This document shows positions 735 to 63,986 of a stretch of DNA of 64,000 nucleotides, piece after piece. Under the pieces are notes generated by a model. The model was given only the letters and a program-made list of their open reading frames with translations, was not told where the DNA came from and ran no database searches. Within the stretch, counting starts at the first letter, position 1, and the number at the start of each line of letters is the position of its first letter. The DNA comes from Amphiscolops sp. MND2022 (lineage: Eukaryota): NCBI GenBank assembly GCA_964187785.1, contig OZ076415.1, forward strand, positions 68,262,001 to 68,326,000, written 5' to 3'. The position numbers were made by a program, and so were the translations under genes.

Positions 735-2199
735 TGTTGGAGTCACAGCGCTGCGATGGAGCCGTGGAGCAACTTTAAGCAAGCAGAAGGCAGCAGAACC
801 CACCTAAACTTGAAAAAAAACTTATTTTGTTTTGTACTTCATTTTAAGTTTTGTAACTATTTCATATTTTTCTCACTTTAAAACCTTATAAGTTGATCTT
901 TGTTCCAAATTGGTGATTTACATGTTGCTTTATTACGAAGATTTAAAATTTTAGATTATGTCACCTTTAAATGATCTAACTTTGGAGATACTACATCTCT
1001 ACCATTGTCATTGTGAAGTAATTAACACTTTGCTTACTACCATTATTCGGCATCATGATGTTTAAGGACTGCTGCATATACGCCATGATGCATTTTTCTA
1101 CAATATCATGCGGTATTATACAATTTAAAGACTAACGTCTATACGGCAATATGTGTTTTATGATGAAAGTAATTATGCGACATCCTACGGTTTACCAAAC
1201 AACGTATAGGCTTCACTGTGCGTTGTTGCTTAGAATAATAACGTCATGTAGCTTTATTGTTATGTGCTTTCAAATTACATTCGGAATACCTTTCAGTGCG
1301 GTGTGCTATGATGTGTTTGTAGGGTCCTGCAGACCTGTTAGTCAAATTTTGAATGTCAAGAAAAATGCTATAAATATATATGTATTGACGTCTTCATGAC
1401 GTAATTCTATTTTTGTGTATGACTACCTTCAAAAAAGAGCGTCATGTTTTCAGTTTTGAGACCAAACGTGCGCTAGGAAAATCATTCTTTCACGAATCTA
1501 TCGTCTCCAAGTGCATTTGCCCGATAGATGAATTCTTTTCAACATTTCATTTCTTCAATGGATCTTTGATTTGCTCTAAACAACTGTGCAGAATTCAACT
1601 TTATTCCACCACAAAACTCCATTTTCTCTTGAGGAAAAGTGGGAAACAAGCGGAATAGACGGTCTAGAAAACTAGAAACACTATCTCCAGAGAGGGAAGT
1701 GAACAATACCCAAGTCGAAACGCCTAATACAGGTAACGAGACTGTCACTAATTTTAATGTTAATGTTCAAGAAGGTTTAGGTGAGGGCAATTCTGAAAAT
1801 CAACTAACTGAGCCCTGTCAGATTAGCAACGAAATACAAGTTTGGACTTAAAAATTTGAACAGAAAAACAAGGACAGGATCATGAAAATGAGAAGAAATG
1901 GACAATAAGTTAGAAACCATTCTAAAAGAACTTAGAAGTAACAAAAATGCATTAACAACCTCGCATTCTAGGTCTGAAACGATAGAAACACTCTCAACCT
2001 TCGAGATCCAAGACAGATAGGTCTTATAGGAGTTCGCGCATCAAACGCTGAAAATTCAGACTCTGAAAACGTAGATTTTCCTCTCGGGCCCACTGAAATA
2101 AAAATATCAGACATGGTGCTAAACCTTTGTATAGAAGCGAGTTAGATCTAGATCCTACAATAGTTTCAAATGAGGACTCAGAGGAAGAGGATTATCACA
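735..2199 (+). mobile_element. Solo LTR (LTR-B), 1465 bp, with decayed ORF in its 3' third
   Basis: TG at 735 and CA at 2198-2199, flanked by CAGGG (730-734 and 2200-2204). Start motif TGCGATG..CCGT.G.GCAAC and catcctacggt shared with LTR-C. ORF remnant MGNKRNRRSRKLETLSPERE...EEEDYH (1639-2198) with stops and frameshifts. Confidence 0.85.
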
Positions 2200-2800
2200 C
2201 AGGGACTGTCAGTCCCGGACATAATGTTTTCGTACTAGTCCCTGTTTGTTCGAGTACTAGTCCCGTTTCTGCAAAAATCAGCAAAACACCTCAAAACTTA
2301 CTTTTGTCTCTGTAGTTCAGAAGTACGCAGTTGGTTCAACAAGTCTCTGCTGTGTTGTTTACTAAGTTATGCTAATTCTTTTTCTCTGTGTTAATGGTCT
2401 GCTACTCGAGGAAACTGGGGCTTTGCAAATTCCAAATTTGGGTTTGTGCAAACGAAAAGTCCAAGAAAATGTTCTGCTTGCGTTACTTTTCATATTTCAC
2501 GTTATTTTAGATAGGTAAGATTGATAATTTGTGAAAGTTGGACTCAGCGGGGTTCTCACCTCAGACTACCATTTGCCACCGGTGGAAACCAGTTTGCCGC
2601 TTTCAACACTGGTCCAACTGTGTCCATCGGTGGTCTCAACGCTATGGTTTTCATCGGAAACCCACTGAAAAAAAGTCAATTTTACAACCGAGCTAGTTTT
2701 ACAACACAGTTAAAAATGAGAAGTACTAGTCCCACATACTGAAGTACATAGTTCCGGCCCCTTCAACAGTCTACTCCTATTTAATTTCAGAGCAGTACTG
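2200..2800. repeat. Unclassified repeat with GTACTAGTCCC motifs (target of LTR-B); related segment near 6790-6900
   Basis: gaagtacatagttccggccccttcaacagtct (about 2741-2772) matches gaagtacatagtcccgccccttataacagtct (about 6840-6872). Confidence 0.4.
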
Positions 2801-2860
2801 ACATCTGATGGACTCAGAATGAGATTGAATGGATTGTATTTGAGGACTCTTGTTGGTACC

Positions 2861-5800
2861 TGTCATGAGTACTCTCTAGGTCTTCATTTCTGTTTGGAAA
2901 CCTATGACACGCATCTCTAGAGTTGCTCCTAAACCTGTGATCCAAGCCTTCTTCGGATCTGCATTCCAGTCTTCAAGCCGGGACTTCCCATCTTCTCTCA
3001 GGCATGTGTCCTTGTCCGGATTTTAGAGTAGCTTGTCTCTGGGGCAATATTTGATCACTAATTGCCTCATTTATGGCTCTCTGAATCTGGGAACTTACTG
3101 TGCTCATGAGATCACTCATTTCCATGGTAATTCTTTGATTTAGCTCTTCTGACAACCTGTTAAACTCACTGTCTGAATATGCTTCTCTCCAACTTCGACC
3201 TTTTTGGGCGTAAGTCTTATTTTCTGTTTTATGAGAATTAGATTGAGAATTGCTATTTTTATTCGGCAACATGTTATTACTGGGACTTTCAGGCCTTCTA
3301 CCATAATTATTAGGTTTCGTTCTCGTCCCTTTCTAAATGATTTCCACCTTACATTACATCGAGATTCTCGATATCAGACAACATATCTGCTTCCCTAAAC
3401 TTTCTTGCTTTCTTTTGCTTTCTTGTAGTAGGCATCAAGAAACCCGATAGTAACGATTAAATTATTTTATCGGAAAGTTATTGTGATAATAATGTATTGT
3501 TATATCTACGTCTGACTCATTCTGGAATAATGGTTTTGCAGGATGTTTTAAGTCCTTCATTTCTGGAGCTCTAAGACAATAATCGTCGCTTTCAGAGTCT
3601 GGGTTTTCGTTGTTAGATGCGTGAACTCCTATAGACTTGTCCATTTTGGATCCCGAAGTTTGTGGATCTTGTATTTCGTTAACATCTGACCTTGGATTTG
3701 TCACCATTGATACACTTTTGTTGGATTTTATCTCTTTCAGAATTGCCTCTAATTTGTTATCCATTTCTGCTCTCATCTTTTCTATTCTCTCAGTATTTGT
3801 TTGTTCAACAATTTGTGTCCAAATTTGTATCTCATCACTAATTTGGCTAGACTCTTTCATTAATTCAAATTAGAATTAGTTAAAGTTCTATTACCTGTTT
3901 CTGGTGAATCAACCCTAGTTCCACTGGTTCCTCCTTCGGTTTCTCCTTTTTCCCATTTCGCTCAGTGGAAAACAAGTTTTGTTTGCTGCGGAAGAATTTG
4001 AATTATCTTTTCAAATTGGATATCCAAATATGGAAAGACAATGAAAACTGAAGAAATGTTAACAAAGCCTGAGAGGGTTGTAGAAATTATAACAATTCCT
4101 CTTGACGGGAGTGGTTTTGTTCCGAACCTTGCTTTTTACGGATTCTCTTTTCAAAAATCACAAAAGTGTGACAAGCATTTTTACAAATATCATAGAATTG
4201 TGAAAAAAACCAAAAATAGAATAGCGTCAGCTTTACGTAATTCTATTTATATCGCTTCCACAATGATGCAAATAAAATTAAATAGTTCAAAGACCCTAGA
4301 AAAACACTGTAGAATGACATTTTTAACACCGTAAATGCTGTGATGATGTATAACTACATGACAATCGGATACTGCACTTTTGGCTGAATAACGTATAATA
4401 CCGCATATTCGTTATATCTTGAACCGTAGGATGGCGTATGACGCATATGAACATTCTTATCAAAAAAGGACAAAAATATATTTACAGTACAAGTCAATCC
4501 GTATGATAGCTTGCAGATTTTTTAAGAAAAGCGTTTGGTGACGTATGTCCGTCACGGTACAAACCGCATGACCATGTATGATGATATTGATGAAAATGTA
4601 TGTTACCGCGAATTCTGATCATCTAAAAACGCATATTGACGCATTATTAAAAAACGTATGATGACGCATATTCTAAAGATTAATTTACGCCCAATGGCGT
4701 ATATTCGTAAGACCAATTTATGTATAATGACGCTTTTTTGGTACTTGCAAAACACTCATTGATGCTTATTCGTTGTTCTAATTGTAGAATGACTACGCAT
4801 AATGGAAATTCAAAGTCACAGATTGATCATTCTAATGTAATCTTTTGCACGTGTTATATTTATGAATGAGGTTTCTATGAGCAAGGCAACTTTGGAGGAC
4901 CTAGAAACAGGCCCAAAAATGGATTTATTGCGAAAAATAAACAAAAGTTTACATGACAATGCAAAAGCATCCACAAGATGAATTTTAATGAAGTTTGAAG
5001 TGTTTTTTCATTGAGATTCTTCGAGCGTTCCTTTTTCATAGTTGCACTACGGAATCATCGCATCTAGACAGATGCGACAGTTATGTTTTAATCAACGTTT
5101 TTAACACTTTCAAGTTCGGAGAAAATTGCCTTAAGCACAAGGAGTCAGAAGTATATATATTCCTTGAGGCATGACATTCAAAGTTTTTAGAGATCATGAG
5201 ATCAACATTTTAACAACCATCAATTCCCAGCATCACAAGATTGCCATATATCAAAGTAGTGAAGGTATTTGAGCTGTTATGGACACAAACATTTCAAAAT
5301 GTTTACGTATTAAGATCATATGAATACAAATAACATCAACACTTCAAAGTTTTACCGCGCTCTAGCACCCTAAAAGTGCATTCCTTAGCAGCCACGTGCT
5401 CACACGTGTGGTTAGAGGGTCATCCAAGTCAACGTGATTTTACAATATTACATGAAATTAGCCTGATCCGGCCACTTTATACATGAATATTGTATGACAT
5501 CTATCTAACAAAACATACAAACTTATCGATTAAAATTAACCATCGATAATTAGCAACTAAAAGCAACTAATATGTGCGAAAATAATGGTTGACCATCAAA
5601 AGTACTAAAATTATCAGTATCAACTAATTACAAGAGTAATTAGTATTACTGCAGCATATTACAAGAAAATAGCCGGAACCGCCCAATTGACCGCTGTTCC
5701 TTTTATGTATTGCACAGAAGCGTCAAAAGGCTTTACTCGGCCATTAGCATTAAAGTACTCAATTAACATAGCTAATGGTGAAATATGGTTGGTTCGAACA

Positions 5801-6153
5801 ACGTGCGCAAGTAACGTCGCCGGAATAGCACTTTGTCTCATTCGAATTCGTTTCCTTTACTGTTGATCAGTTGTATTCAAAGTTCTATTGCTTCACGTAT
5901 TTAGTACTGCTTTGCCAATTTGACCCTCAACATGAACATTTCCATTTGAATGTTAACAGACTAATAACAAAGCAAACTAGAACATGTTGGTACTACAAAA
6001 GAGTAATTAACAATGTGAAAATGAGCTAGGGTTCTGTCTAATTAAATGTGTGTCTGTGTCTTAATTTAGAAAGTTCGTGATGTACCGGGTGCGATTTCTT
6101 GTCCTTCAGCCGTAGTACTATTGTCGTGCCGTCATAGGCGGCAGGCTGCGACA
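2861..6153 (-). mobile_element. Solo LTR (LTR-D), about 1690 bp after removing nested LTR-C
   Basis: TG at 2861 and CA at 6152-6153, flanked by GTACC (2856-2860 and 6154-6158). Minus-strand start TGTCGCA is the same as LTR-C. ORF 3272->2862 (SSQIQRAINEAISDQILPQ...DLESTHD) has one internal stop. Confidence 0.8.
3482..5079 (-). mobile_element. Solo LTR (LTR-C), 1598 bp, nested inside LTR-D
   Basis: TG at 3482 and CA at 5078-5079, flanked by GTTAT (3477-3481 and 5080-5084). ORF remnant MGKRRNRR...SQISDEIQIWTQIVEQ...KMRAEMDNKLEAILKEIK...HYYH is homologous to those in LTR-B and LTR-E. Confidence 0.85.
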
Positions 6154-7526
6154 GTACCGCGTATTTCGAAGCAGCAAATTGGGCAGTTTACCAATAAGTT
6201 TACCAAATCATCAAATTTCATTTCCCCAAATGATTTTCTTTTGGTTTTTTCAAAATTATGTGAGAAAAAGCTCTCTTGAGCTCGAATGGTTCCCATTTGT
6301 GCGTTTTTCGGCCATGTGCGACATTTCGGGAAAAATTTTAAATTGAACCCAAGTGTCTCACTTTTGCTGTTTTGTTTTTTCTTCAGTCAAGAAAAAGCCC
6401 TTTTAAGCACTAAGGTTGTTTTTCGGCGGTATACAATTCTCTATCCTCGATTAGTTTTCGATAAAAATTTTTGGAAAATGTTCCAATGCAAAAACGAAGA
6501 TTTATTCTTTGGGATTTTCTTGATAAACAGATGCATGTTCCTTATCATTAAGTTAAATAACTGGGCTGGAATAAATTTAGGCAGCCTTGGAGAGAATACC
6601 AAGAACGAGATAAAAAGGTAAATAACCCCAGGGGCGGGATACTACCCTAGTCTATTCCTTGTAACCCTGGTTGAACTTCACGACGCGGGGTCTCAAAACA
6701 ATTAGCATGATTTTTTCCAGGAATGTAAACTGGAATAATCTTATCTAACACTTTTTGGCTACATGTAATTACAAGGTCCCCTAAGACCTAATAGCAGTAC
6801 AACACAGCCAAAAATGGGAAGTACTTGCTGCAAGTACCGAAGTACATAGTCCCGCCCCTTTTATAACAGTCTTTCCCCCACTTTATCTGGGAGCACTAAT
6901 ACCAGCTGCACTCCTAGACTGAGATTTTTCAAATAGGCTAATACGAACACCAAAGCCTTGCAGTACCCTGAACTAAGTAATTGCTAATTTCTATTTACGA
7001 TGTAAATGTTGCAAAAAACGTAGTGAATAAAAAGAATTGAGGTAGACTGTTTTGATTGGATGAATTGAGTAAGAAGCTACTATACTGTCCCTATTCAAAG
7101 GGGTGGGGGCTGACTATTAAGCCTTTTATCAGTTTTTTTTAATTTTTTCAATTTTATACCACTTTAGACATATCAAAGGTTTTGAGTTTCTTTTAATAGA
7201 AAGACATATCTTTTCTTGGTTGTATTAAATTTCTAAACCGCTCAATGCATGTTTTCCCTGGCTTTTTGAAACTAATTATATGCGGGTCTCATTTCATTTT
7301 TCATTGAATGTTATGCGATAGTCACAAAGAGAAATGCCTTGGACACATATAAATCAAGGATGTTTGTTGATGAAATCAGCTGTTCATTGTACTTTAAAAC
7401 TAGTCTGACTCTATTCAATTTTTAGCCAGCGCTTTTCGAAGAAAAGAGCCGACTATAACAGTGGCTTTTTAAATATATCTGCAAACTTTCTATGGTTATG
7501 GTTACTTAGTTAGCTTAGCAACTTCT

Positions 7527-8135
7527 AACAAGACGGGAACGTCTAAAATCGGCGCTATATCTAAGGCTCAAAAAGCGCAATGTTGTTGAACCTGTAAAAG
7601 GGGGGGCCCTTCGGGCCTTTTGAAAATCCAGTTTGTTGCAAAATATCAAATAAATTAAAGGGGGACCCTTTGGAGACAAAAAAAATCGAAAATTTTTCAA
7701 GAAAAAATCGAATTTTTTTTCAATTTTCGAAACAAAAACGAAACATGAGAATTTTGAACAGTCTCATAGTGCCGAAATACGCAAAAGGGAAGACGCTTTG
7801 GGCTTTTGGGCACTTTAGTTTGCTCCAAAATATCATAAAAAACTTGAAGGTGGGACCCTTTCAAGGCAAAAAAAAATTCGAAAAAAAGTCGCACAGTGCC
7901 GAAAAAAATTGAATGAGGGATCCTTCAGTCTCGTCCGTTTTCGCAAATGCTCGAAAAACTTTCCGGCTAAAGCAAGGAATCGAACTCGTGACCGCTGGGT
8001 TCACCGTAAACCGAGTAAAGTCTGTACTTAAAAGTGGTACATACACAATGAGGTCTGTGGTCTGACGAAAAAAAAGAAAACAAACTAGCCACTGTAATGG
8101 TCGGGCTCTTTTCACTAGAAAACGCCGACTAAAAA
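7527..8135 (+). repeat. Modular interspersed repeat family X (GTCGGCGC subterminal repeat, AAGGGGGACCC units, terminal hairpin)
   Basis: Starts ...aaatcggcgctatatctaaggctcaaaa and ends gtcgggctcttttcactagaaaacgccgactaaaa. Same ends at 31830, 51253 and 63445. B-box-like GAGTTCGATTCC on the minus strand at about 7976-7988. Confidence 0.75.
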
Positions 8136-11100
8136 CCACTTGGCCTAAAGGTTGAGCTGGATTTCTGAGAAGGTCTGAGACGCGGTCAAAGAAGCAGGCG
8201 TATTTTTTTGCACTTTAGACGTGTCCGAAGTAATAATTATCATTTTTTAAATTCAATTTTTGATGTTTCCATTTGGGATAAAAAGCTTTTCGAGTCTTAT
8301 GCCTTTACCTTCAAGTATTTTTCGGCACAGTAATTTTGCAATTATTAACAATAGTGAAATTACAATTTTGCAAAATTATTCACAATAGTGTTTTTTTTGC
8401 ATATTCAAAAGGATGATTGTTAAACATTGTTAAAAACAGCTTGTTAAACATGGCTGTGTGATTTGAGGGTGAAAGTGTGTCTCGATAACTACCCGGGGTG
8501 ATTCTCCATGCAAGCCGACTACCACCACGCAAAAATCTTAGCAGTGATCGTGCCACGATTCGTACTACGATTAGCGTGATATAGTAGTAAGATTGTGCTA
8601 CGAAGCGTATGATAACCTTCGTACAAAGTGTCACGTTAGAAACTCAAAAGAATCATTCCTACACTTTCTAGCGTACTTAGGCGAATACCATAAGTATAAT
8701 CCACCAGTTTGGTTGACCTGTTCGAACATTTGAAAAATTCGAAGTTTGGCAGGCTCAACTGGTAGCTAAAATCTGCCGCGAAGACGGTAAACGACGAGAA
8801 AACCTCCCCCAACCGAGAGAGTGTAGATGAACTGCAGAAAAACCCCGAAAAAAGGCACCAAAGACATTCGTGACGGTGTACAGTGAAAAAACGTCACGCC
8901 GGAAGGCTATTCCCCGAAGAATACCGAAACGTGTCAGAAAAGACTCACAACTGTCATACAGACTACGTTCAAAATCCGGAATTCGCTGAAATTTGGTACC
9001 AGGTGCGATATTTGTGAATATTCTACGTTGTTAGTACAGATATTCAAAGATATGGTGATGTTGGACCTGCTAGGTCCCAATTTCACATCAAATTTTGTCA
9101 ACAGAATGTATTTAAGCTAATTGCCGTTTTTGGACCTCGGAAGTTTGTAGGAAGTCGCAGGAAACTTAGAAATAGTTTTGACGTGCTGTGTGAATGCTTT
9201 TTACGGAGCTCTAAATGTGGGGAGCCTCCTTGTCGGTTGAAAGTCCCCTTATGAGACCCTTTGATGGAGAAAAACTAGACTCTAGGGTTGTGGTAAGGCC
9301 ATGGTCTCCTGTCTCAGCAACCTGGGGAATGTGCCGGCTCTAGAACGTACGCTGCTAGCTTGACGTTACAATGCAAACTAGCAGTATGATTTTGAAATAA
9401 ATCAAACTTCTTAAAATGGTTTCCAAACAGCGGAGACGGCCCCACAATTCAAAGCTGTCACTCCATGAAGAGTTCGTCTACCGTGTTAAATCATAGCAAT
9501 TGACCGCGCTATACTCTCAAGTGCCTAATTGCTAAAATATACTTCTGAATAAGTTCACTTATTTTGGACAAGTTCAAATTTCAAGATGATTTACAATTGA
9601 ATTTTGATGTGCTCAAAGTAAATAAAAAGACTTTTGCAACATAAAGGTGACTTTTAATGAGATGAATATGTTGTGCAATATCATTGTAAGGCTCTATTGT
9701 TTACCGTAAGAGAAATCTTAGGAAAATGCAGTTCCGTAGAGCTATTCGTACTAAGAGCCATAAAACGAGCTCCATGATTTATTCGATTTTGCTACGATCT
9801 TACTACGATAAGATAATCGTGCCGTGAGGTTCAACATGTGCAGCAGTCACCAATCTGTTTTCGAATACATGACCCGCACAAGTTCTTTACAGAGACCTCT
9901 CAATTGTTTGAAGGTCAGAGGTTTTCGAATTAAAAAGAAATAAAAAAACGATTTTAACGGCCAATTTTCACCTGAAAATTAGTAAATTTCATTTTCTGCA
10001 AATCTGGTATTCACTATTGAACTGGTGGGAAATTGAGAAAAATAGCCCTTGATTAGAACGGTTCATTCTCAGAGAAACACTACCAGGTTTCTATGAATCG
10101 CAGTAATCAAAAATGCTAAATAGTTCCAGTCGGCTTCAATTTCAAAGATTTTTGAAGAAAAATTTCTCGTGAAAAACTAAGGAAAAAGCTCAGAAAACTT
10201 CAGGTTGTTTGCTTTTGTTCACCCTCCAACCTTCTCAAAAACAAAATTTTGAAGGTCACTTTTCGAAGTAAAATTTTGCAAGCCCAGACTCATTACTGTT
10301 TTGTTATAAAATTTGTTTCATCGAAACTTTCCTTGCGTGAGAATTCGTAGCCAATATATCTTTAATTGACAATTCATGAAGTGACTTTTCGTCGTTTTGT
10401 TTTTTTTGCATTCTTTGCGGTCGAAGTTTTACAAAAGTTCTATAACATACCTTATCTAAATAACACTAAAATGTTTCAAAGGGTCGTCCTCTGAAATTTC
10501 TAAGCATCTGAAAAATCTAAATAATAATTTTCACTTTCAGCCTCCCTATTCGCAATTTTTCAATTGGGCATTTGCACTTTTAAAATAGCTGTAGAGCTTA
10601 AAAAATGGGTTCCACCCAAAATTTTCAATGAACAGCAATCAATGAGTTGAAGTTTTTTAAAAATATTTGCAAAAACTTCCACTTCGCAATTGAACTTCGT
10701 TTTTTTTCATGTAATTAGTAATTAGTAAAGAAGATTCCTAGTTTGGTAGTCCCATAACCGATGTAGAAAGAACCTTCTGCACTGATTTTGGTAAAAGTGT
10801 TGGAAAGTGTCGTTGGCAAAAATTATTGATTGACCGCTTTGAAAAGAAATAATCAAGTCACCAATCCGGTGCATTCTGTTTCTTTTCAATTTCCGTTGAA
10901 TAAGGTGACATTTTTGAAAGTGATACCATATAATGTCATAATCTCTTCTTCAAATCCTTCTTAGACTCTTTCCCGAATTGATATGTGATGTAAGTCATCT
11001 TTTTTTCCTCGTATGGATCAGATGCTTAAAATTTAATGCAGGGAATCAACCGAGACACCCGTGGAAATAGGAGGAAGATATTCCGAAAATGTGTTTTTCA

Positions 11101-28284: not shown

Positions 28285-29785
28285 GATTCTTCACTTCTTC
28301 CGGGCGAGTCGGCTGCTTGGCAAACTGCAGATGAGTCTTGGCTCTTCGTTTGGGGAAATCACCAAATTCATGGCTCTTTTCCTCATCATGTACATATCAT
28401 TCGCGTCAGCTATTAATTCCCTGTATTGGAAGGACCAGTTCACAGTCATTAACGCATGTAGGAACAGGGACAATGTCACCGATGGCCACAAAAACTGTCC
28501 GGATTACATTAACCAGAAGGTCAAGAAGGATGAGTTCCAGTTTATAACCATCGGGGGATGTCTTTATCAACTTTATTGGACGCTTTTTGGCTACTCCGAT
28601 ATTGTGTTTGCTTCTAAAGTGTACAAAGACTGGACCCTTCATACGTTTGTCGGCTCAATTTTGTTCATTCTTTTCAACTTCGTAGCCGTGGTTGTTCTTC
28701 TAAACGTGCTTATCGGTATGATCACAAAAACGCTAGACAACATTGAAGAAAATATTGACACAGAATGGAAATTTGCAAGGTCAAATATATACGCAGAGTA
28801 CATTGGTGATAATAGCTCTCTGCCTTCGCCATTCAACATTTTCCCATCTTTGCGCAAAATGATGCTGCTTTTTGCAAAGTTCTGGGAACTTTGCACGGGA
28901 AGTGACAAAATGATGCATTATGCCAAACCCAACTTACGAAGTGACCAAAAAAAGCGGCAAGAACATGAAAATCGTCTGCCAGATATCATGCGTGCCATGA
29001 AAGACCAGTACATGCGAAACCAGATGAAGGAAGCCGAGGCCGGGGAAGTTACTTTGGAAGATCTGGACTCTCTGAAAAACGATGTTTCTGGTCTGAAGTT
29101 TGAAGTGCTGAGTTACGTCCGGTGCGTTCCAAGCACCTTAGATGCCATGTGTAAGCGGCAGTTTCAACAATTACAGGAAATCGAATTTTTGCAAAACCGG
29201 CAAAGAGAGCAATGGAATGAAATGCTAGCCCACGAAGAAAGAATGCAGGAAATCAAAAAGTTGCACAGTGCCGAAATTGAAAGACTGCAGCAAAAACAAG
29301 ATGAGAGTTTTGCTATCACGAGGGATCATCATTCTCAAAAACTAGAGGAAGCGACAATGTTTCAGACAAAGCAGGCTCATGACAATCAAGTTGAGGCGAA
29401 AGAAAAAATCAGCCAGGCGAAAATAGAACAGATTAACAGAGTTAATGATATCTACAAAAGACAGGACGATCATTTCAAGCATCTTCGTGAAGAACAGGAT
29501 TTGATCAAAAGCATTCAAAAAGAGAATGCACACACAGCCAATGAAAACTGCACGATATTGAAAGAGTTGATTGAGAACCAAGACAGAAAGATAACGAGAT
29601 TCAAGTGTGAACAAGATGAGAAGAACTGTGAAATGGAGCGGAAACAGGTGGAGATGGTTGAACAACTTAAACGTGAGAATGAACAGAAACACTTGATACA
29701 GTGTGAAGAGATGCGTGAACTTCATTCGCGGCAAGAACATCATTTGAAGACACTACATTGTGAACAGGCACGTCAAAAAGAATAA
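28285..29785 (+). CDS. TRPC: TRPC-family channel, exon with S4-S5 linker, pore, S6, TRP box and coiled coil (stop at 29785, or spliced at 29767)
   Basis: RILHFFRASRLLGKLQMSLG linker, pore YQLYWTLFG, S6 VVVLLNVLIGMI, TRP box EWKFAR, LPSPFNIFPS, then a long E/Q/K-rich helix. Confidence 0.93.
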
Positions 29786-30126
29786 TATTATCGAATGCTG
29801 ATCCTAAACAAAAAGTCGAAGAAACTTTGAACTAGGATAGGTAGGGAACCATAGCTAACCAAAACCAGCTTTCCAACCAGGCTGATTATAGCCTGGACTA
29901 TCGTGCCACCCTCCATTTCATACGATTTTTTTTCGATCTCGATCTTTTTATGATCAAGCTGGAGTCACAAATGGCCCAGAAAATGGTAAATTTGATTTCA
30001 TAATTTTCTATGACCCATACAATCGTAAGTGTTCCCAGTTTGGCATATTTAAGGAATACTCAAAAAATTCATTACCACTGAGTTAAATGACTGCGTTACG
30101 CCATATACCTACATTATGCCAACAAC

Positions 30127-30474
30127 CTTCCAGGGCTCCCCTCCCATACAAAAACGGATTGGATTGACAATAGTCTTATATAATACTCACTGTATAATTC
30201 TAGGATAAAAATAGTATGACCATTCAAGCTGCATGGTAAACAGTATCACCATAGACTGGAAATAACTGTGGTTATAGGACGTCCATAGTCCGAATCACAA
30301 AAGGTTCAACCTATGATCAGCCTGATTCCATGAATGGCATAGTTATGCATGCCTTCATGGTTATCTTGCTTACCATACAGTTTGGATGATCATCCTATGT
30401 TTATCCTAGAAATATACTGAATTTATTATAGCTGACTATCATCAGTCTCTTTTTGTATGGGAAGTCCGGGGAAG
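30127..30474. mobile_element. Possible small MITE
   Basis: Imperfect inverted ends CTTCC...TCCCATACAAAAA. No TSD verified. Confidence 0.35.
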
Positions 30475-31293
30475 CGCGAAAACTTCAAAAGTCAGTCAAT
30501 ATGTGTATGAGGTCGAAATGATTAGAGACGATGTTTGGTGTAAACTAGTCAACTACTGTCATTACCGATGGTGTCAACTGGTTAATGTACGAGGCTGTGT
30601 CAACTGGTGTAACGACTTATCAATGCGTCTAATGTGTGACAAGTGTAAATCTTCAATGTTTGGGCCCAAAATTGACCCAAAAATGGCTAAAAAACGGCCA
30701 CTTTTCGACTTTTTTGATTTTTGCAAAAAGTGTCCATACGATTCGAACGAAACTTTCTACAGTCATTTTCTACACCATAGTATGGGCCTATGTGTGCAAT
30801 TTCAATTAATTCGTCTGACTGGGATTGGAGCGAGTCAGAAGGAAAAAGACCTAAGCCGACTCCTTCACCTCATATGCGGCTCTGGTTTTACTTCTTGCTG
30901 AACTCCTAGTTCACTGAGAACGTAAAAAATGTCCTAAAATGTACTTTTTGACTCCTGTTTCAGTTTTGTAGAGGAACAAACTTCAGGAGAAATCACAAAA
31001 TCAATTTATTTCCTTTTTACAGCTGTAACTTATATAATCAACAAGAAAACTACAAATTCTGAATGAAAATATACCCTCCGAAGAAAATAATTCAACAGGT
31101 GAAGAATATATCGGAATTTAACAAGTTGATAGGCGAAGAAAACGAAAATATTGTTCTTCTTCTTGCAAAATTTTACGGACGGTTCTATTGGAAACTTGGT
31201 AATTTATGGCCGCCTGTGTAAAACTCGTACAATGGGCAAATGTTTTGGAATGAATTGCAGTATAAAAATTTTGACATGCCTTAACCGGAACAG

Positions 31294-33232: not shown

Positions 33233-35066
33233 TCGCCTCGGGAGAAGCAGTCAAAATTAGCAGTGTACACTGCGGTCAAATCTCAATTGTTAATATTCAG
33301 AATCTAGCCAATAACTTAATGCTCATCGCCGTAGTTTCAATTTAATTTAATTTTCATACCTCCTTCTCGTTTTGGCTTTCGGCCGAAGGAGAATCGATTA
33401 TTGGCATCAAGTTCACGATACCAAAAAACCATCTGAAAAATAAATCTAAAAAACGTCTGAAAATTTCAGCGGTTCATTTAGAGTTCAAATAAGACAAAGC
33501 CTCTCAGATTCGCCCATGAACTATTAACGGCAAAACACTCACGATTTGGCTCTTTCTGTTGCCATTTTAGCGCAAAAAGAAAATTAAGTTTTGGAAGAAT
33601 CCTTTTGGAAAAGCCAATTTGATAGGAAATTGATAGGACTGACAGAGTTGAGAAAATCCGTCCTACTTTGGTCAGATTACTAAAGTGTAAAAACAGCTAT
33701 AATGTTACACTATTGGAAAAGCCTCGGACAAAATCTTCCTCAAGTAACATTAAATGGGACCCCGGTTTTTCGAGTATTCCGCAGAAAATGCGAGTAACAG
33801 CGGAAAGTAACGAAATACGTTTCTCATTCATAGTTTAAGTTTCTTCATGCAAATTAACTCGAACAAGTTTTGTTCTGAAGCAGCAAACAATTAGAGCAAA
33901 GTTGTATTTCCACCAAAAAGCTGACACACTCCAGGACGGACCCACGTGCAAAATGTAATTCGAGACCAGTTTGAAATTGTATGGAGATGTTAAAGATTGA
34001 AAAACAGCCTAGCTATAGTGTACGTAAATATTCTAGGCAACAAGATTAGCTTCAAAAAACTTTTTTGGCCAAGCTTTCGGATTCGAAAATTATGAAACTT
34101 GACTTTTCTTGCATCACACCAGCATTAAGTTTTCCTGCTGTCCTCACAGAGCGTTCGCAGGCTGAACACTTGATTCTACTTCGTTAAAAAGTTGTACACT
34201 ACTAATGACATGGATTTTAATGGTATTATTTTTGTTTTCTCGGATAATCATCGTCAGCATCTCACCATATTCGAATAGTGAAGAACCAAATATCGTGATA
34301 TAATCTTTTTTTTCGAATGTTGGATAAATGTCCATAGTTTTTGTTACATCCTTGCGAACCATAGCTAATCTGACATGATCATCTTTATCACCGCAATTCC
34401 AAAAAGAATAAGAAGGATTCCTCAAACTTCATAACAGATCACATGAAAGCGGAAAACTTTGTAACCTATACATCCGATACCTCTTTTCAAACTACGAAAA
34501 ACAAACGAAAAGCCATTGAACAACATTAATAGTCACTGAAATTGAAGTAAGGGAGCCTCCACAAGTCTCTCGGAAAGAATTTTTGATTAAACGAATTATA
34601 GTACAGACGAATTACGCTTTCAAATTGAAAGCACTAACTGGTCGTTATTATGAACCATTTTGTGCAGACGACTTGTACACTGTTTTTGTTAGCATTATTG
34701 TGCATTATAGCAAATCGCGAATGTGTTCCGAAAACGTTAACCTTTTAAACGAAATTGATAAGAGCAAAATATCATTTTATCAAAAATGTGTCACACAGGA
34801 AAAAAACCTCTTTACGACCAAATCGAATTAGATTCAGACGTTGGAAATCTCTCACGCAAGAAAACATTAAGCAAATGATTGATGAAATTCACCTTTTAGC
34901 GGAAAACCTGTCTAAATTCAGTTTTCAAGTGTCTTGAAGTTCCTGAGATACACTATGGTACCAAAAAGCTAAGTACAGCTGAATTTTTTGAATTTTTTTC
35001 AAGTCAAAAAAAAATGAAAACATTTGTGAACAATTTCAATCAGTTACCGGAAGTTGTGCTTCGAAA

Positions 35067-36974
35067 ATGGTTAAACCGCTTGATTCATTTTTGGTTTGCA
35101 AAATTGTTACTCTTCGCGAGATTGGGTTATCTTACAATCAAATCAAAGAGAAATTGGGTTTGAAGTCACGATCAACAGCACAGTCAGCTTACAAGCGCTT
35201 TTTGAAAACCAGTTCTTATTCTCCAAAAAAACCACCAGGAAGACCGGAAAAACTTAGCAAAAAAGACAAAAGATTAATTATAAGAAGCGTCAAAAACGAT
35301 CCCAAAACTACATTACAAAGAATCAGGGTAAAGTATAATTCTTTTGCAACCTCAAAAAGTGTCTCAAGATCTACAATTCGGCGAGTTCTGAAGAAGTATG
35401 GGCTAGTTTCTAGAGTGGCGGCTAAAAAATTTCAGCTCAATAAAAAACAACGAACAACGAGGAAAAAATGGTGCTTGCGAATGTCCAAGAAGCCGCTCGG
35501 TTTTTTGTCCAGCCTTGCGCTCACTGAAAAAAGTACATAGTAAAAAATTTTCAATTTTGGGAAGGAAAATCATACACAGAGTCCAACACAGAGTCCGCAA
35601 ATAGACGAAAATTTTCAGCAAAAAAATCGGAAATTTTCGAAAAAAATCTCAAAGTTTCGGAATTTTCCTAATTTTTTTATCGCAACACCAAACGGCCCCT
35701 CCTACAAACTTTTCGGCACTGTGAGACAATTTTTTCTCAACACCAAAGGGTCTCCCTTCGAAATTTTTCGGTACTGTGAGACAAAAAAATCAAAAATTTA
35801 GAAAAAAAATCGAAATTTTCGAAAAAAATCTTCGAAATTTTCCCAATTTTTTTCACAACATTTCACAATAAGAATGCATTCTTTTATTTTTGAAACCTTC
35901 CAATTACGGCCTTGAACTGAAACAAAATCCATGCATGAATTTTGGAATTTTTTTCAAAATTTCGATTTTTCGAATATTTCATTTTTTTTGTTTCACAGGG
36001 CCGAAAAAAATTCACAGGGTGACCCTTTTCTTCTGTTTGCGAAATCGTCTAAAAACACGGGACAGCCCTGGGGTGGAACCCACAATCTTTGGTGTCAAAA
36101 GTGAGAATTCAACCGGCTGCGCCAAATCTACTTGAATTCGAACAGTTAAAAGCGGCGACTAAAAAAAATAAATGTCATTGTAATAGTCGGGCACTTTTTG
36201 ATATAAGCGCCGACTAAGAACCGTAAACAATCGGGGAACAGCGTAAGTCGGTGACCTGCTTAAGCCTCAAATTTATCGACAAAGTGTTTCAACTTTTTCT
36301 GACTTTTTCTTTTGTTTTTTATTATCGCAGATTTTTGTAGTACTCTACTTTTGCTATTCTTTTTCTCATGAAGTTTTACATAATAATCTTGGCTGGATGG
36401 AAAAGGATTCTGGGAAAATGTGGTTTTCACTGATGAAACTCGTGTGCGTCTGAACAGTGACGGTATTGTAAGAGTTTTCCGAGAAAAAGGATCGCGTTTC
36501 CACTCAAAAAATATTCAAGGGCAGAACACTGATAAACGCTCGCTTATGTTCTGGGGAGCTATTCGATCGGATGGCAGGAAGATGCTAATTAGATGCCCGG
36601 CAACACTCAATAGCAGCGGCTATGTCGAAATTCTTGAAAAGTATGACAGAAATTTGCACCTACCGGACATTGTTTTCCAGCACGATAATGCCCCAATTCA
36701 CAGAAGCAGAGAGGTTTCCAACTATCTAAGTGAAAAGAAGTGGGATGTGCTCGAATGGCCTCCGTATAGTCCTGATTTGAACCCCATGGAAAATATTTGG
36801 GCTATACTGAAGAAATCCCTGCAAGGACAAACTCTAACGTGGGAAAATTTGGAAGAAACAGTGATTGATATTTGGAACAATATCAGTCCCGAAATTATCC
36901 GAAAAATGTACGCATCTTATGAGAGTCGCCTCGTAAAAACTATAAAAAACGATGGAAATATGATAAGTTATTAG
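35067..36974 (+). CDS. Tc1 transposase, 333 aa when 35067-35499 is joined to 36406-36974
   Basis: HTH region with GRPEK. Joined sequence reads KKPLGFWENVVFTDE. Catalytic TDE, HDNAPIH, DLNPME with 34 residues between D and E. No stops in either half. Confidence 0.9.
35500..36405. other. 906-bp insertion in the Tc1 transposase with GT..AG ends, containing nested family X pieces
   Basis: CTCG|gttttttgtccagcc ... ggctggatggaaaag|GATTCTGG. GG on both sides. Imperfect inverted ends TTTT...TCCAGCC. Confidence 0.85.
36061..36130 (-). pseudogene. tRNA-like (SINE-head-like) cassette
   Basis: Minus strand TTTGGCGCAGCCGGTT (A-box-like) ... TTGACAC ... GTGGGTTCCACCCC (B-box-like). Stems are degenerate. 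Confidence 0.5.
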
Positions 36975-37239
36975 TGTGTTTGTCTCCTAATTTGATTATA
37001 TTTTTTTTCTGTTTAAATTTCAAATTTTCCTCTCAGTTTTTAAAAATTCAACAGGTGTACGTAGCTTTCTGGTACCATAGTGTACCATTACCGACCAAAA
37101 ATGATTGACAACCTAAAAAATTACCAATTTTCAAATTGGATGACTACTTCGGAAAGAAACGAAAAATATTACCTTTTCCAGAATTTCCTCATGCATCGAC
37201 ATCAATCACTTTTCCATTCATAATACTTTTTGAGTGAAA

Positions 37240-48384: not shown

Positions 48385-51252
48385 ACTAGTTTTCGCATTT
48401 TTCTCATATCTGCAAAGGGAGCCCCCTTCAATTTTCTGACACTTTGCTACAGAATGGATGTTACAAATCCCAAAGGGTCGCCCCTTTCACATTTTTTGGC
48501 ACTATGAGATTGTTCAATATTCCTATTTTTGTCTGTATATAAGTTTTCTTAATACATATCCAATATTTTTTACCAATACAATCTGAATTTTTTGAAGAGC
48601 GGCGTTTTTTGGTAAAATGTGATTTTTTTTTCTAATTTGTTCTAACCAAAGCCCCCTTTCAATTTTTATAAGAAACTAAAAGTTTTGAAAGCATAGAGGA
48701 CTCCTTGGTGTTTTCGGCACTGTGCGACATACCGGTGACATTTTTTGAAACATTTTTGTGAACTTTTTGTGGGTTTCTTAGTCCAGGTTAGAATTCGAAG
48801 GTACAAACGCATCACATGATACAGATTTCTGATTGAGCGTCTATTTAAATCGTGAAGAGCACAATAATTATATAATTTTGTTCATAGAATTTTTTCTTCT
48901 TTCGAATGCGAATTTGCACATCAACGCTTCATCGAATTACAGCTGCTTGACGATCAGCACGCGACATGAAATTAAAATGGATTGACTTCAAGCGGACGTT
49001 AAGAGGAAGCAATCAAAAAATGTCTGGTGTATGTATCTGAGAGGTTCGGGCAAAATGCTGATGTACTTATCTCCCGACTTTTTGGCTAAGAGGGTCAATA
49101 TGACATGCATTGTGGCATTTAACGAATCATGTATCCCTTTGACTGCGTTACGTTTACACCGCAATTGTTACGTAAATCCAAAGTGCAACTTTTGTGTCAA
49201 AGCCTTTGCAAACATTTTACAGCTCATTTTGTGAAAGACAAAATGAAACAAAATAAGTTTTACGGGTTTGGTTTGTTGGTAATCATGATTTTGAATGACT
49301 CACGTCCATACTTGTTGCATGCTGGATAATTTTTCATGAAATCTGGAAAATTCAGGAAGCTTTTGGTGGTAAATGTAGTAGAATTACACTGCGTTTTCCA
49401 CTACTGCAATTAAATTTGAAAACATTCCCCACTTCCTTACAGGCACGATCACATTGTATTCACACTTTGATTTCTCAACTTCTCATCTGATGTAATCGCC
49501 GCTTCTCAAGGCTCAAGGAAAACACTGAAGATGACGCAGTTTACGTCATGAATGAAGTCAATTTTCATGGCTGTAAAACTGATAACATCTTCGTTGCATT
49601 TGAAAACAGAACTATTTCGTAAAGAAACCGACAAAACTTCAAGGCTTCCAAATGCCGCCACATTTAAGATGCTCTCGTCCAAGCAGCTCGATAAAAGTCG
49701 ATTACGATAGGCATATGAAAGTTTCTGTTCAATTTTCAGAGAATCATGAAAAAAGTTGTTGGCCACTTTAAAGAACATGCAGAAAGACTTAAACCTAAAA
49801 ATCACTGGTTTCGTTTTGAAGTTGCTATTATAGATAAAGCAATGAGATGTTGTTAAAAGTTGAACTTCTAATGTTATGTTCCCATTTTCACCTTCATGTC
49901 TCATTCTCGACATGTCATCAATGATTATGGCTTTTTATGACATTACATTCAAATCTTGGCTAATCATTCATAACATTCGATTCATGGCTCATCATCCATG
50001 GCCATTTTCGTTACATTTGAATCATGGCTAATCATCCAAGATGATGACCATGATACGAACCGATGATTCATCTATAAAGATTCATGACACAAAGCGACTC
50101 ATTTTAAAATCCATTAAAGTTAGTAAGTCTGTGATAATTCATGCATTCCACTAAAAACCAATCGGATAATTCGACTGGAACGAATTTTATTTGCGAAAAA
50201 GTTTCCTGCAAAATACGGGGAAAAACAAAATATAAAATCTACCAAGTTTTCGAATGATTCGAATTAAACTTGTTAAATCAGTTTCATAACGTTGTAATTA
50301 AATAAAACAAATTTTGGTACAATTTAACATAACGTGTTTCACTTTTGGACGTAGCAAATTTCCTTTTCTAGTGTTGTAAAAAACGAGAGTTTAGGCCTTT
50401 TCAACACTAAGGTCATGTGTTTTCATCCATGTCCATGTGATTGATAAGTGAGAGCAATGTGGTTGCGGATCTCACCGAACGAATCGATCCAAGTATTTAA
50501 AGGTTTCAGATAAATTTCTATAATGCTACATTAACACGCTTTGGGCTTGTTGCCACCAAAAATCCTGGATGAAGAACAAAAAATCCACCTCCATCAATGT
50601 ATTCAAGGGACCACTGATGGATTTTTAACAGAAAATGTTTTTAGTTTTTCTTTCAAGTGCAAAATCTGTTATTCAAACTTGCATGTAATGCTTGCAGCCT
50701 TCGACAATTTACGCCTGAATTAGCTTTGCTTCAAGTTGTTTTTTTTCCGGTTTCTGCATGGTTGGTGCCAAAAGGCGTCCTCAATGGTGCTCGGCAAAAA
50801 CAAGTCGGCACCCCGCTCAAGGTTCAAATTGAGTAGAGTGTTTGTGACAACTATTGTGAAGCATTTCAATTATCATACTGAATCAAAAACACCCGAAGCG
50901 GTACCCTTGAGACTCGAAAACAGCCTTTTTGTGTAATCTAGAAACATCAGGAAAACATTTTTGTTGGAAAAAATTCAAACGGGTACCCAGGAGACTTGAA
51001 AACTGATTTTTTTCTGATCTCGAAACATAAAAACCCCATTAAAAAAATTTTGTTTCCTGAAGTAAATGCCGAAAAACTAAAAAAAACATCTGTGGATTAC
51101 ACTGGAGTTGCGGGCTATCCTGGTTTTCGGGCTTGAGGGCTATCAAAGAGCTTGTTTGGGGCCCTCGATGTTTCCGCGGTTTTTACATCAAAATTATTGA
51201 TGGGCCAGGCACTATTGATGCCCGAAGGTATCATTGCACCATAGTCGAGGTG

Positions 51253-51905
51253 TTTTTAGTCGGCGCATTTTAGTAGAAAATGTGCCCGACTATTACAGTG
51301 GGTAGTTTTTTTTTAGACACGAAAGTTCCACTTTTCTTTCTGTGTCTTTTCTTTTTGTTCTTTGTTCAGTTCATTTCTTCAACAACTTGGCGAACCTAAG
51401 AAGCGCGTCCAAAACGAAAAAGAAAACAAAACAAACAGAACCTCGACAACACACTAACGATCTCCCCTAAGCCTCCCCTCCCACACTTTTTTCGGCACTA
51501 TGCGACTTTTTTTGAAACTTTTTAGATTGCACCAAAGGGTCCCCCCTTTATTTGTTTCGATATTTTAAAACACAATGGATGTCAGAAAATTCCAAAGGGT
51601 CCCCCCTTTTACATTTTTCGGCACTGTGACACTGTTCAAAAATCACATTTTAAAATTTATTCTGGGCAATTTTTTTCAGTCCTTAAAGGGTCCCCCCTTC
51701 AATTTTTTCTTATTTTGCAACCAGCTGGAGTTTCACAAAGCCCAAAGGGTCCCCCTTTTTACATTTTTCGACACTGTGACACTGTTCAATTCATTTTTTT
51801 TCATATTTTGCCACCAGCTGGAGTTTCACAAAACCCAAAGAGTCCCCCCCTTTTACAATTTTGAGCCTTAGATATAGCGCCGACTTTGGCCGTTCTCGGC
51901 TTGTT
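51253..51905 (-). repeat. Family X repeat copy (opposite orientation)
   Basis: Hairpin AGTCGGCGCATTTTAGTAGAAAATGTGCCCGACT, five CAAAGGGTCCCCCC-type units, then gagccttagatatagcgccgactttggccgttctcggcttgtt. Confidence 0.8.
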
Positions 51906-51909
51906 AACG

Positions 51910-63444: not shown

Positions 63445-63986
63445 TTTTTAGTCGGCGCATTTTAGTAGAAAATGAGCCCGACTCTTACAGTGAGTAGTTT
63501 TTTAGACACGAAAGGTCCACTTTTTTGTTCATTTGTTCAACAACGTCAAACCTCAACAGCTTCAAACCTCAACAACTCCAACCTCAGAAGCGCGTCCAAA
63601 ACGAAAAGAAAAAACAAAACAGACGTCCAGAACCTCGAAAACACTAAGGATCCCCCATAGCCCCACTTTTTCTCGGCACTATGAGACTTTTTGAAACTTT
63701 TTGGATCGCACCAAGGGTCCCCCTTCATTTGTTTCGATATTTTGCAACGCAATGGATGTCAAAAAATTGCAAAGGGCCCCCCTTTTACATTTTTCGGCAC
63801 TGTGACACTGTTCAAAAATCTAATTTTAAAAATTTTTTTGGGAAATTTTTTCATGTCTCCAAAGGGTCCCCCTTCAATTTTTTTTTCATTTTTTGCAACC
63901 AGTTGGAGTTTCACAAAGCCCGAAGGGTCCCCCTTTTAATTTTGAGCCTTAGATATGTCGTCGACTTTGGCCGTTCTCGGCTTGTT
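63445..63986 (-). repeat. Family X repeat copy
   Basis: Same hairpin start and gagccttagatat...cgactttggccgttctcggcttgtt end as 51253-51905. Confidence 0.8.

What the first reader, a model, noticed from the sequence alone, without database searches (positions are those of the whole stretch)
35067..36974. Intact Tc1 transposase split by an insertion that is also a frame-restoring GT-AG intron (introner-like)
Seen: removing 35500-36405 (starts GT, ends AG) gives CTC GGA TTC TGG and a complete 333-aa DD34E transposase (KPLGFWENVVFTDE) with no other lesion. The insert is flanked by GG on both sides and has imperfect inverted ends (TTTTTTGTCCAGCC vs TTTTCCATCCAGCC). Each splice dinucleotide is half duplicated target and half insert end. 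The insert also contains nested repeat pieces, suggesting some age, while both coding halves stay open. Established: introner elements are DNA transposons that build splice sites from TIR and TSD bases, and C. elegans Tc1 and Tc3 have introns. Caveat: the donor GTTTTT and the purine-rich acceptor are weak, so this may be a plain disruptive insertion.
Basis: partly seen in the sequence, partly recalled or inferred. Interest (0 to 1): 0.72.

Follow-up and report, generated by a model that had tools for sequence, protein, structure and literature searches.

The report
Two-exon Tc1 transposon, inherited intron
The 906-base interruption is not a fresh insertion into this copy but an old intron with base-pairing ends, carried by every copy of this young, roughly 100-copy Tc1 jumping-gene family and by a sister family, so it is an intron-containing transposon, not an active intron-making element.

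Summary
The sequence observation holds. Tc1 element 34949-37084; exon 1 35067-35499; 906-nt GT..AG interruption 35500-36405; exon 2 36406-36974. Together they give 333 codons, collinear with uninterrupted relatives.

The interruption was not inserted here. A second copy is 99.3% identical across the whole element. The exon-1 ORF that reads into the insert is identical on 71 contigs. No insert-less form appeared in reads or in the protein collection.

A sister family (70% aa identity) has a 502-nt interruption at the same codon and phase, with homologous 13-17-nt ends and an unalignable interior. Between the two families pN is 0.15-0.17 and pS is 0.73-0.87 (saturated), and the two branches are symmetric. 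More distant relatives lack the interruption. So it was most likely gained once, before the families split, and has been removed from the mRNA ever since.

Its ends form a conserved 13-14-bp RNA helix (chance about 3e-4). That fits an origin from an inverted-repeat transposon, but this is not shown. The "GG duplication" is uninformative, and the ends were not found elsewhere in 121 kb.

This copy is a polymorphic insertion, because an empty site exists. No RNA data exist, so splicing is inferred.

The scan noted this family and its sister before on other pieces of this genome.

The parts
34949..34950 (.). Left TA target-site duplication
   Evidence: TA at both element ends. The empty-site contig in four runs carries a single TA.
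34951..34981 (+). Left terminal inverted repeat of the Tc1 element
   Evidence: Inverted pair I2, 33 nt including the TA, 91% complementary. The same ends occur in copy L001 at a different genomic site.
35067..35499 (+). Transposase exon 1 (144 codons plus the first base of Gly145); DNA-binding HTH domains
   Evidence: Translation. HTH_Tnp_Tc3_2 E 7.7e-14, HTH_32. Exact ORF on 71 contigs.
35500..36405 (+). 906-nt phase-1 GT..AG intron, inherited by the whole family
   Evidence: Present in L001 at 99.2% identity. Read depth equals that of the exons and no insert-less joint was listed. A homologous 502-nt intron sits at the same codon in the sister family.
35501..35514 (+). 5' arm of the terminal inverted repeat / RNA helix
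   Evidence: Pairs with 36391-36404: 14 bp including 3 G.U. Present in both the MFE and centroid folds. Conserved in family B.
35608..36028 (.). Interior repeats: direct repeats 35608-35678 / 35793-35853, 55-nt tandem pair 35675-35784, inverted pair 35745-35839 / 35938-36028; related to an abundant dispersed repeat
   Evidence: Depth peak at 35791-35897.
36391..36404 (+). 3' arm of the terminal inverted repeat / RNA helix; a 13-nt block identical in families A and B
36406..36974 (+). Transposase exon 2 (last two bases of Gly145, 188 codons, TAG); DDE catalytic domain, D154/D238/E273
   Evidence: Translation. DDE_3 E 1e-20. DD34E spacing. Two residues differ from the ORF found on 86 contigs.
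37052..37082 (-). Right terminal inverted repeat
37083..37084 (.). Right TA target-site duplication

Best explanation
This is one recently inserted, still polymorphic copy of a young Tc1/mariner family with on the order of 100 copies. Its DD34E transposase gene has two exons separated by a 906-nt phase-1 GT..AG intron, which lies between the DNA-binding and catalytic domains.

The intron was gained once, in the common ancestor of this family (A) and a sister family (B, 502-nt intron), after they split from intronless relatives. Since then it has been copied passively whenever the transposon moved.

The inferred mechanism: the transposase mRNA is made by removing the intron. The two splice sites are brought together by a conserved 13-14-bp helix formed by the intron's inverted ends, which probably compensates for a weak donor (GTTTTT) and a purine-rich acceptor.

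The inverted ends suggest the intron began as a small TIR transposon that landed in the ancestral transposase gene (about even odds). The interior has since been replaced or filled by common dispersed repeats.

Shown: the structure, its presence in all copies examined, the shared position, the conserved ends, purifying selection on both exons in both lineages, and the empty-site allele.
Inferred: splicing itself, the role of the helix, and the transposon origin.
For: Family-wide presence:
- Copy L001, at another genomic site, is 99.35% identical over all 2136 bp, intron included.
- The exon-1 ORF that reads 13 codons into the intron is identical on 71 contigs, and all listed cluster members end in the same intron-encoded tail.
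- In four sequencing runs the intron has the same contig depth as the exons, about 100 times the flanks, and no 35499->36406 joint was listed.
- No uninterrupted A- or B-type ORF exists among proteins of 144-457 aa.

Age and function:
- Family B has the same exon lengths (433 and 569 nt) and an intron in the same codon and phase.
- Only 13-17 nt at each intron end are homologous between A and B.
- Between A and B, pN is 0.146 / 0.165 and pS is 0.725 / 0.866 for exon 1 / exon 2. Third codon positions are 44-49% identical.
- With an intronless outgroup, branch dN is 0.08-0.10 for A and 0.08-0.09 for B.
- Older B copies, 81-91% identical, also keep the intron and its ends.
- Families C and D (L004, L005), P0141-P0145 and L009 read straight through the site.

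Helix:
- 14 bp in A and 13 bp in B, present in the MFE and centroid folds of both.
- Chance about 3-5e-4.
- All three DNA-level mismatches in A are G.U in the sense RNA. One pair is G.U in A and A-U in B.

Recent activity:
- An empty-site contig with a single TA is present in all four runs.

Context:
- A host TRPC intron in this window also has paired ends.
Against: - There are no RNA data at all, and no run on record as RNA holds the sequence, so splicing is not observed.
- The donor GTTTTT and the acceptor GGAAAAG are poor matches to the usual metazoan consensus, and the helix would bury the donor.
- Intronless relatives such as family C have nearly identical transposon TIRs and could mobilise A and B in trans. 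Recent movement therefore does not by itself prove that A makes its own enzyme.
- Homology between the A and B introns is limited to the ends, so two independent insertions of related TIR elements cannot be strictly excluded.
- Only one joint was left unlisted, and the search for intron ends elsewhere covered just 121 kb.
Confidence: 0.78

Rival explanations
1. Plain disruptive insertion. An unrelated element broke the transposase gene in the ancestor. Families A and B are non-autonomous and are moved in trans by intronless relatives with near-identical TIRs. The GT..AG ends are coincidental and nothing is spliced.
For: - No RNA evidence.
- Weak donor and acceptor.
- Family C has very similar transposon TIRs and no interruption.
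- Within family A the copies are about 99% identical, so open halves need no selection.
Against: - Between A and B the synonymous sites are saturated while pN is only 0.15-0.17, with equal dN on both branches. Non-autonomous elements would not keep both exons under such constraint.
- The exon lengths and the frame-restoring junction are conserved exactly.
- The intron ends are better conserved than the exons.
Confidence: 0.1
2. True introner behaviour. A TIR element with strong target preference inserted independently into families A and B at the same site, which would explain shared ends with unrelated interiors. It may still be mobile elsewhere in the genome.
For: - Only the terminal 13-17 nt are homologous between the A and B introns, as in MITE families that share TIRs.
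- The genome appears to hold other transposon-derived introns with paired ends (notes). One host example in this window has a 7-nt direct repeat at both junctions.
Against: - The same nucleotide, phase and orientation in two families is improbable without extreme site specificity.
- No copy of the end motif lies outside A/B elements in 121 kb.
- No insert-free A or B copy was found.
- An unalignable interior is expected anyway when synonymous sites are saturated.
Confidence: 0.08
3. The interruption is removed from the RNA, but not by the ordinary spliceosome. A helix-guided cut-and-join at the paired ends would do the job instead, as has been suggested for non-conventional introns of some protists.
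For: - The helix places both junctions opposite each other.
- Splice signals are weak.
- Earlier notes on this genome report non-GT donors in introns with paired ends.
Against: - Both families keep GT and AG exactly at the frame-restoring positions.
- The proposed AG is the first AG after a pyrimidine-rich stretch in both families, apart from one in family A only a few bases after that stretch.
- No such mechanism is known in animals.
- No Rfam family matches anywhere in the window.
Confidence: 0.04

Closest known systems
Intron-containing Tc1-family transposons: C. elegans Tc1 and Tc3, Drosophila hydei Minos (from memory, not checked here)
   Same: Autonomous TA-targeting elements with TIRs, whose transposase is read from two exons after removal of one GT..AG intron carried by all copies.
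   Different: - Those introns are short (tens of bases) and sit elsewhere in the gene.
- Here the intron is 906 nt, 42% of the element.
- It lies exactly between the HTH and DDE domains.
- It has conserved inverted ends and weak splice signals.
TLEWI, Tc1-like elements with introns, of pteriomorph bivalves (bioRxiv 10.1101/656579)
   Same: Tc1-like transposase genes that acquired GT..AG introns after the origin of the family, with identical exon-intron structure among copies.
   Different: TLEWI are low-copy, lack TIRs, have DD36E spacing and 2-5 introns, and look domesticated. This family has on the order of 100 copies, intact TIRs, TA duplications, DD34E spacing, one intron, and a polymorphic insertion.
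Introners / MITE-derived introns (Gozashti et al. 2022 PMC9860276, 2025 PMC12130899; review PMC11282704; Amoebophrya introner elements PMC7789003; Fritillaria borealis as summarised in PMC11282704)
   Same: An intervening sequence bounded by terminal inverted repeats that can pair in the RNA and bring the exon ends together, with splice dinucleotides at the junction of element end and target bases.
   Different: - Introners are defined by many similar introns in unrelated genes, and the 2022 screen explicitly discards similar introns that lie in homologous proteins. Here all similar introns lie in paralogous transposase genes and were multiplied by the host transposon.
- There is no clear target-site duplication.
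- There is no presence/absence variation of the intron itself.
P element third intron (retention gives a truncated repressor; from memory, Laski et al. 1986 as cited in 10.1101/656579)
   Same: Transposase output depends on host splicing of an intron. The unspliced message here would encode only the DNA-binding half (157 aa in A, 194 aa in B).
   Different: No evidence here for regulated retention or for a repressor. The intron-encoded tails are not conserved between A and B beyond the first few residues.

Membership tests
Tc1/mariner (IS630-Tc1-mariner) autonomous DNA transposon, DD34E group | Terminal inverted repeats flanked by a duplicated TA | tested here: met
   33-nt inverted pair, 91% complementary. 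TA at both ends and a single TA in the empty-site contig. The same ends with other flanks occur in L001.
Tc1/mariner (IS630-Tc1-mariner) autonomous DNA transposon, DD34E group | Transposase with N-terminal paired HTH DNA-binding domain and C-terminal DDE domain, with 34 residues between the second D and the E | tested here: met
   HTH_Tnp_Tc3_2 and DDE_3 above Pfam cut-offs. D154, D238, E273 with spacing 34.
Tc1/mariner (IS630-Tc1-mariner) autonomous DNA transposon, DD34E group | Multiple copies at different sites, with evidence of recent movement | tested here: met
   Identical ORFs on 71 and 86 contigs. Element depth about 100 times the flanks, and an empty-site allele.
Spliceosomal (U2-type GT-AG) intron | GT..AG boundaries whose removal restores a reading frame collinear with uninterrupted homologues | tested here: met
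Spliceosomal (U2-type GT-AG) intron | Spliced junction observed in RNA | not testable with these tools
   No run on record as RNA holds the sequence. The four runs laid are contigs with even flank coverage, most likely DNA.
Spliceosomal (U2-type GT-AG) intron | Recognisable donor consensus, branch point and pyrimidine tract | tested here: inconclusive
   The donor GTTTTT is weak. A pyrimidine-rich stretch lies 35-55 nt upstream, and the proposed AG is the first usable AG after it in both families. The splice consensus of this animal is not known to me.
Spliceosomal (U2-type GT-AG) intron | Position kept while flanking exons evolve under purifying selection | tested here: met
   Same codon and phase in A and B. 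pN 0.15-0.17 against saturated pS, with symmetric branches.
Introner (transposon that creates introns; Gozashti et al. 2022 criteria) | At least four sequence-similar introns in non-homologous genes | tested here: not met
   All similar introns found lie in paralogous Tc1 transposase genes. The end motifs are absent elsewhere in the 121 kb held. A whole-genome search was not possible.
Introner (transposon that creates introns; Gozashti et al. 2022 criteria) | Terminal inverted repeats at the intron ends | tested here: met
   14-nt arms, 11/14 as DNA, conserved in family B.
Introner (transposon that creates introns; Gozashti et al. 2022 criteria) | Locus-specific target-site duplication overlapping the junctions | tested here: inconclusive
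   Family A shows only G|G at both junctions, which any G|GT..AG|G intron has. Family B shows CTTGG / CTAGG, 4 of 5. With a single insertion site, no locus-specific test is possible.
Introner (transposon that creates introns; Gozashti et al. 2022 criteria) | Presence/absence variation of the intron among otherwise similar gene copies or strains | tested here: not met
   No insert-less joint among the listed joints. No uninterrupted A/B ORF. All listed junction ORFs carry the intron tail.

The most novel reading that the evidence does not exclude
In this animal lineage, introns born from inverted-repeat transposons are recognised largely through pairing of their ends. The Tc1 intron would be such an intron: it has been kept for a long time because its 13-14-bp terminal helix substitutes for weak splice signals. 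It has hitch-hiked on its host transposon to hundreds of copies. When it is retained, the message yields a DNA-binding-only protein that damps transposition.
Probability: 0.25. Interest if true: 0.55.

Novelty: new member of a known kind. Interest (0 to 1): 0.33.

Why it matters
- It corrects an attractive reading. The many near-identical 'introner-like inserts' that the scan flags in Tc1 copies of this genome are one old intron multiplied by its host transposon, not repeated intron-creating events. Screens for introners must discount this kind of hitch-hiking.
- It gives a datable intron gain inside a transposon gene: after the split from intronless relatives and before the split of families A and B.
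- It is a compact natural substrate, with two diverged versions sharing only the paired ends, for testing whether end-pairing helps splicing of weak-signal introns in this animal.

Tried and rejected
- Other copies of the element or the insert in the window: none.
- tRNA genes and Rfam families in the window: none, so the insert is not a SINE or a self-splicing intron by these tests.
- RNA evidence: no RNA run is listed, and the single search and single read-laying run were used.
- Search for the 13-nt intron-end block elsewhere: only chance-level near-matches in the window, and only the A/B introns in the loci. The first and last 80 nt of both introns hit only A/B copies.
- Reading a longer target duplication: B shows CTTGG/CTAGG and A does not, so this was rejected as uninformative.
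- Assigning the inverted ends to a transposon superfamily: no match that I could justify.
- Alternative donors. GT at 35533 would be in frame in A (an 11-codon extension) but has no in-frame counterpart in B. GT at 35540 and its B counterpart are out of frame.
- Interior homology between the A and B introns: it exists only through pieces of an abundant dispersed repeat that occurs in most loci fetched, so it is not evidence of common descent.
- Deriving the host splice consensus: only one host intron could be defined in the window.
I did not build, search or fold the joined 333-aa protein.
- The large representative search, structure prediction and collection DNA scans were not needed.

Full report
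WHAT IS IN THE SEQUENCE

The region holds a complete Tc1/mariner element at 34949-37084. It has 33-nt terminal inverted repeats (91% complementary) and TA at both ends.

The transposase reading frame starts at 35067 and runs to 35499. It resumes at 36406 and ends with TAG at 36972-36974. The 906 nt between these points start with GT and end with AG. 433 + 569 = 1002 nt, which is 333 codons plus stop, with one Gly codon split after its first base.

The first half matches HTH_Tnp_Tc3_2 and the second half matches DDE_3, both above Pfam's cut-offs. The catalytic residues are D154, D238 and E273, with the DD34E spacing.

I aligned the two halves separately against uninterrupted relatives of 331-362 aa. 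The halves abut with exactly one residue between them, the split Gly. An intronless 333-codon element from another assembly (L009) is collinear codon for codon.

THE INSERT WAS NOT INSERTED HERE

There is no second copy in the window, so I looked outside it.

- In four public runs the unique flanks have contig depth 20-76, while the element has about 2,000-9,000. The insert has the same depth as the exons, and none of the listed joints skips 35500-36405. Contig depth is a rough measure, but the contrast is about 100-fold.
- A copy fetched from another assembly (L001), at a different site, is 99.35% identical over all 2136 bp, insert included.
- The ORF that runs from the ATG through exon 1 and 13 codons into the insert is found, residue for residue, on 71 contigs. 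The exon-2 ORF is found on 86 contigs. Every listed member of the exon-1 cluster ends in the same insert-encoded tail.
- A search for proteins of 144-457 aa found no uninterrupted ORF closer than 63% to these exons.

The insert is thus a constituent of the family, which has on the order of 100 copies about 99% alike.

This window's copy is itself recent. All four runs contain a single-copy-depth contig that joins 34951 to the right flank with one TA. That is an empty site without a footprint, so the insertion is absent from, or heterozygous in, the sequenced material.

A SISTER FAMILY DATES THE INSERT AND ARGUES FOR FUNCTION

A second family (B; L002, L003) has closely related transposon ends. 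Its exon lengths are the same, 433 and 569 nt. Its proteins are 76% and 70% identical to A for exons 1 and 2. It carries a 502-nt GT..AG interruption in the same Gly codon and the same phase.

Only the ends of the two interruptions are homologous:
- about 14 nt at the 5' end;
- 15-17 nt at the 3' end, including a 13-nt block that is identical in the two families.

Older B copies, 81-92% identical to B, carry the interruption too, with the ends nearly unchanged.

More distant relatives read straight through the site. These are families C and D (L004, L005), proteins P0007, P0012, P0018 and P0039, the full-length P0141-P0145, and L009.

The simplest history is one gain in the common ancestor of A and B.

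Between A and B, synonymous sites are saturated (pS 0.725 and 0.866; third codon positions 49% and 44% identical). Non-synonymous differences are few (pN 0.146 and 0.165). With L009 as outgroup, the non-synonymous change is shared equally between the branches: 0.08-0.10 on A and 0.08-0.09 on B.

Both lineages have therefore kept a working transposase through a long divergence while carrying the interruption. This requires that the interruption is removed from the message. It is indirect evidence but, to my mind, strong.

THE PAIRED ENDS

In the sense RNA the intron ends form an uninterrupted helix of 14 bp in A and 13 bp in B, starting within three bases of each splice site.
- The helix appears in both the minimum-energy and the centroid folds of both pre-mRNA segments.
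- End pairs drawn from the intron interiors reach this length in about 3-5 of 10,000 trials.
- The three DNA-level mismatches in A are all G.U in the sense strand.
- One pair is G.U in A and A-U in B.

The ends are better conserved than the exons, while the interior is unalignable. That points to constraint on the ends.

Such inverted termini are the expected remnant of a TIR transposon. Pairing of such termini is described for transposon-derived introns in Amoebophrya and for the non-conventional introns covered in the review (PMC7789003, PMC11282704; Fritillaria's non-canonical introns are there traced to MITEs). I therefore consider a transposon origin plausible, at roughly even odds.

It is not shown, for these reasons:
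- The 'GG duplication' is what any G|GT..AG|G intron displays.
- Family B's CTTGG/CTAGG match is weak.
- The end motif occurs nowhere else in the 121 kb I hold.
- I could not assign the ends to a transposon superfamily.

The interiors of both introns contain pieces of an abundant dispersed, partly tandem repeat that also occurs in most loci I fetched. This explains the 'nested repeats' and the difference in intron length.

WHAT REMAINS OPEN

No run on record as RNA holds this sequence, so no spliced read exists.

The donor GTTTTT and the acceptor are weak by usual metazoan standards, and the helix would cover the donor.

Intronless family C has nearly the same transposon ends and might mobilise A in trans. 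The recent insertion is therefore not by itself proof that A feeds itself.

Two independent insertions of related elements at one site cannot be formally excluded, because only the ends are homologous.

The organism is an animal. The best named hit of a TRPC-like exon in the window is the acoel Convolutriloba macropyga, at 42% identity. I did not determine the species or its splice consensus.

COMPARISON WITH WHAT IS KNOWN

Tc1-family transposases with an intron are known. These include Tc1, Tc3 and Minos (from memory) and the bivalve TLEWI elements (10.1101/656579). This one differs in the length of its intron, its paired ends, and its place between the two domains.

Introners are defined by similar introns in unrelated genes, and the screen of Gozashti et al. 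discards similar introns that lie in homologous proteins (PMC9860276). By that test this is not an introner family. It may, however, be a single old transposon-derived intron.

Earlier notes of this scan reached the same conclusion for the 502-nt version (s1-188585). They also list the 887-907-nt version on other pieces of this genome. Other notes report host introns with paired ends and non-GT donors in this genome. I saw one such case in my own window, the TRPC intron at 29768-31293.

VERDICT

This is an intron-containing Tc1 transposon, a new member of a known kind. It has one moderately interesting twist: a conserved terminal helix that may assist splicing.

Noticed in passing
window:29768-31293: A host TRPC-like gene has a 1526-nt GC..AG intron that is absent from the contiguous ORF of a 62-66%-identical relative (P0122). 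It carries the 7-nt direct repeat GAACAGG at both junctions. A 13-nt inverted repeat (92% complementary) spans the donor (29766-29778) and lies 12 nt before the acceptor (31269-31281). It looks like a transposon-derived intron with paired ends.
   Followed up: partly
window:34949-37097 (empty site): All four public runs contain a single-copy-depth contig joining the two flanks of this Tc1 copy with one TA and no footprint. The insertion is therefore polymorphic, or absent from the sequenced material.
   Followed up: partly
window:7526-8137, 48414-48530, 51242-51906, 63445-63986; also L001:4972-6336, L003:4839-6115, L005:5102-5259: An abundant dispersed repeat with internal units of about 100-150 nt occurs in most sequences fetched. 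Pieces of it lie inside both the A and the B introns. Its nature (MITE, satellite or part of an LTR) was not determined.
   Followed up: partly
window:34949-34980: In each run, 12-13 contigs share the first 32 nt of the element's left end and then continue with unrelated sequence. This suggests non-autonomous derivatives or other families using the same terminal repeat.
   Followed up: no
protein P0061 (157 aa, ENA contig): An internally deleted derivative of family A: the N-terminal 96 residues of exon 1 are fused in frame to the last 61 residues of exon 2. The intron and the catalytic core are therefore lost.
   Followed up: no
L007:395-2030: An old B-type copy carries an additional insertion of about 1.6 kb within exon 1, and its intron acceptor has decayed (AG lost).
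   Followed up: no
window:39990-47566 (- strand): A run of long ORFs (810, 484, 353, 205, 176 and 160 aa) lies on the minus strand, most likely the coding region of a retrotransposon. It was not examined.
   Followed up: no
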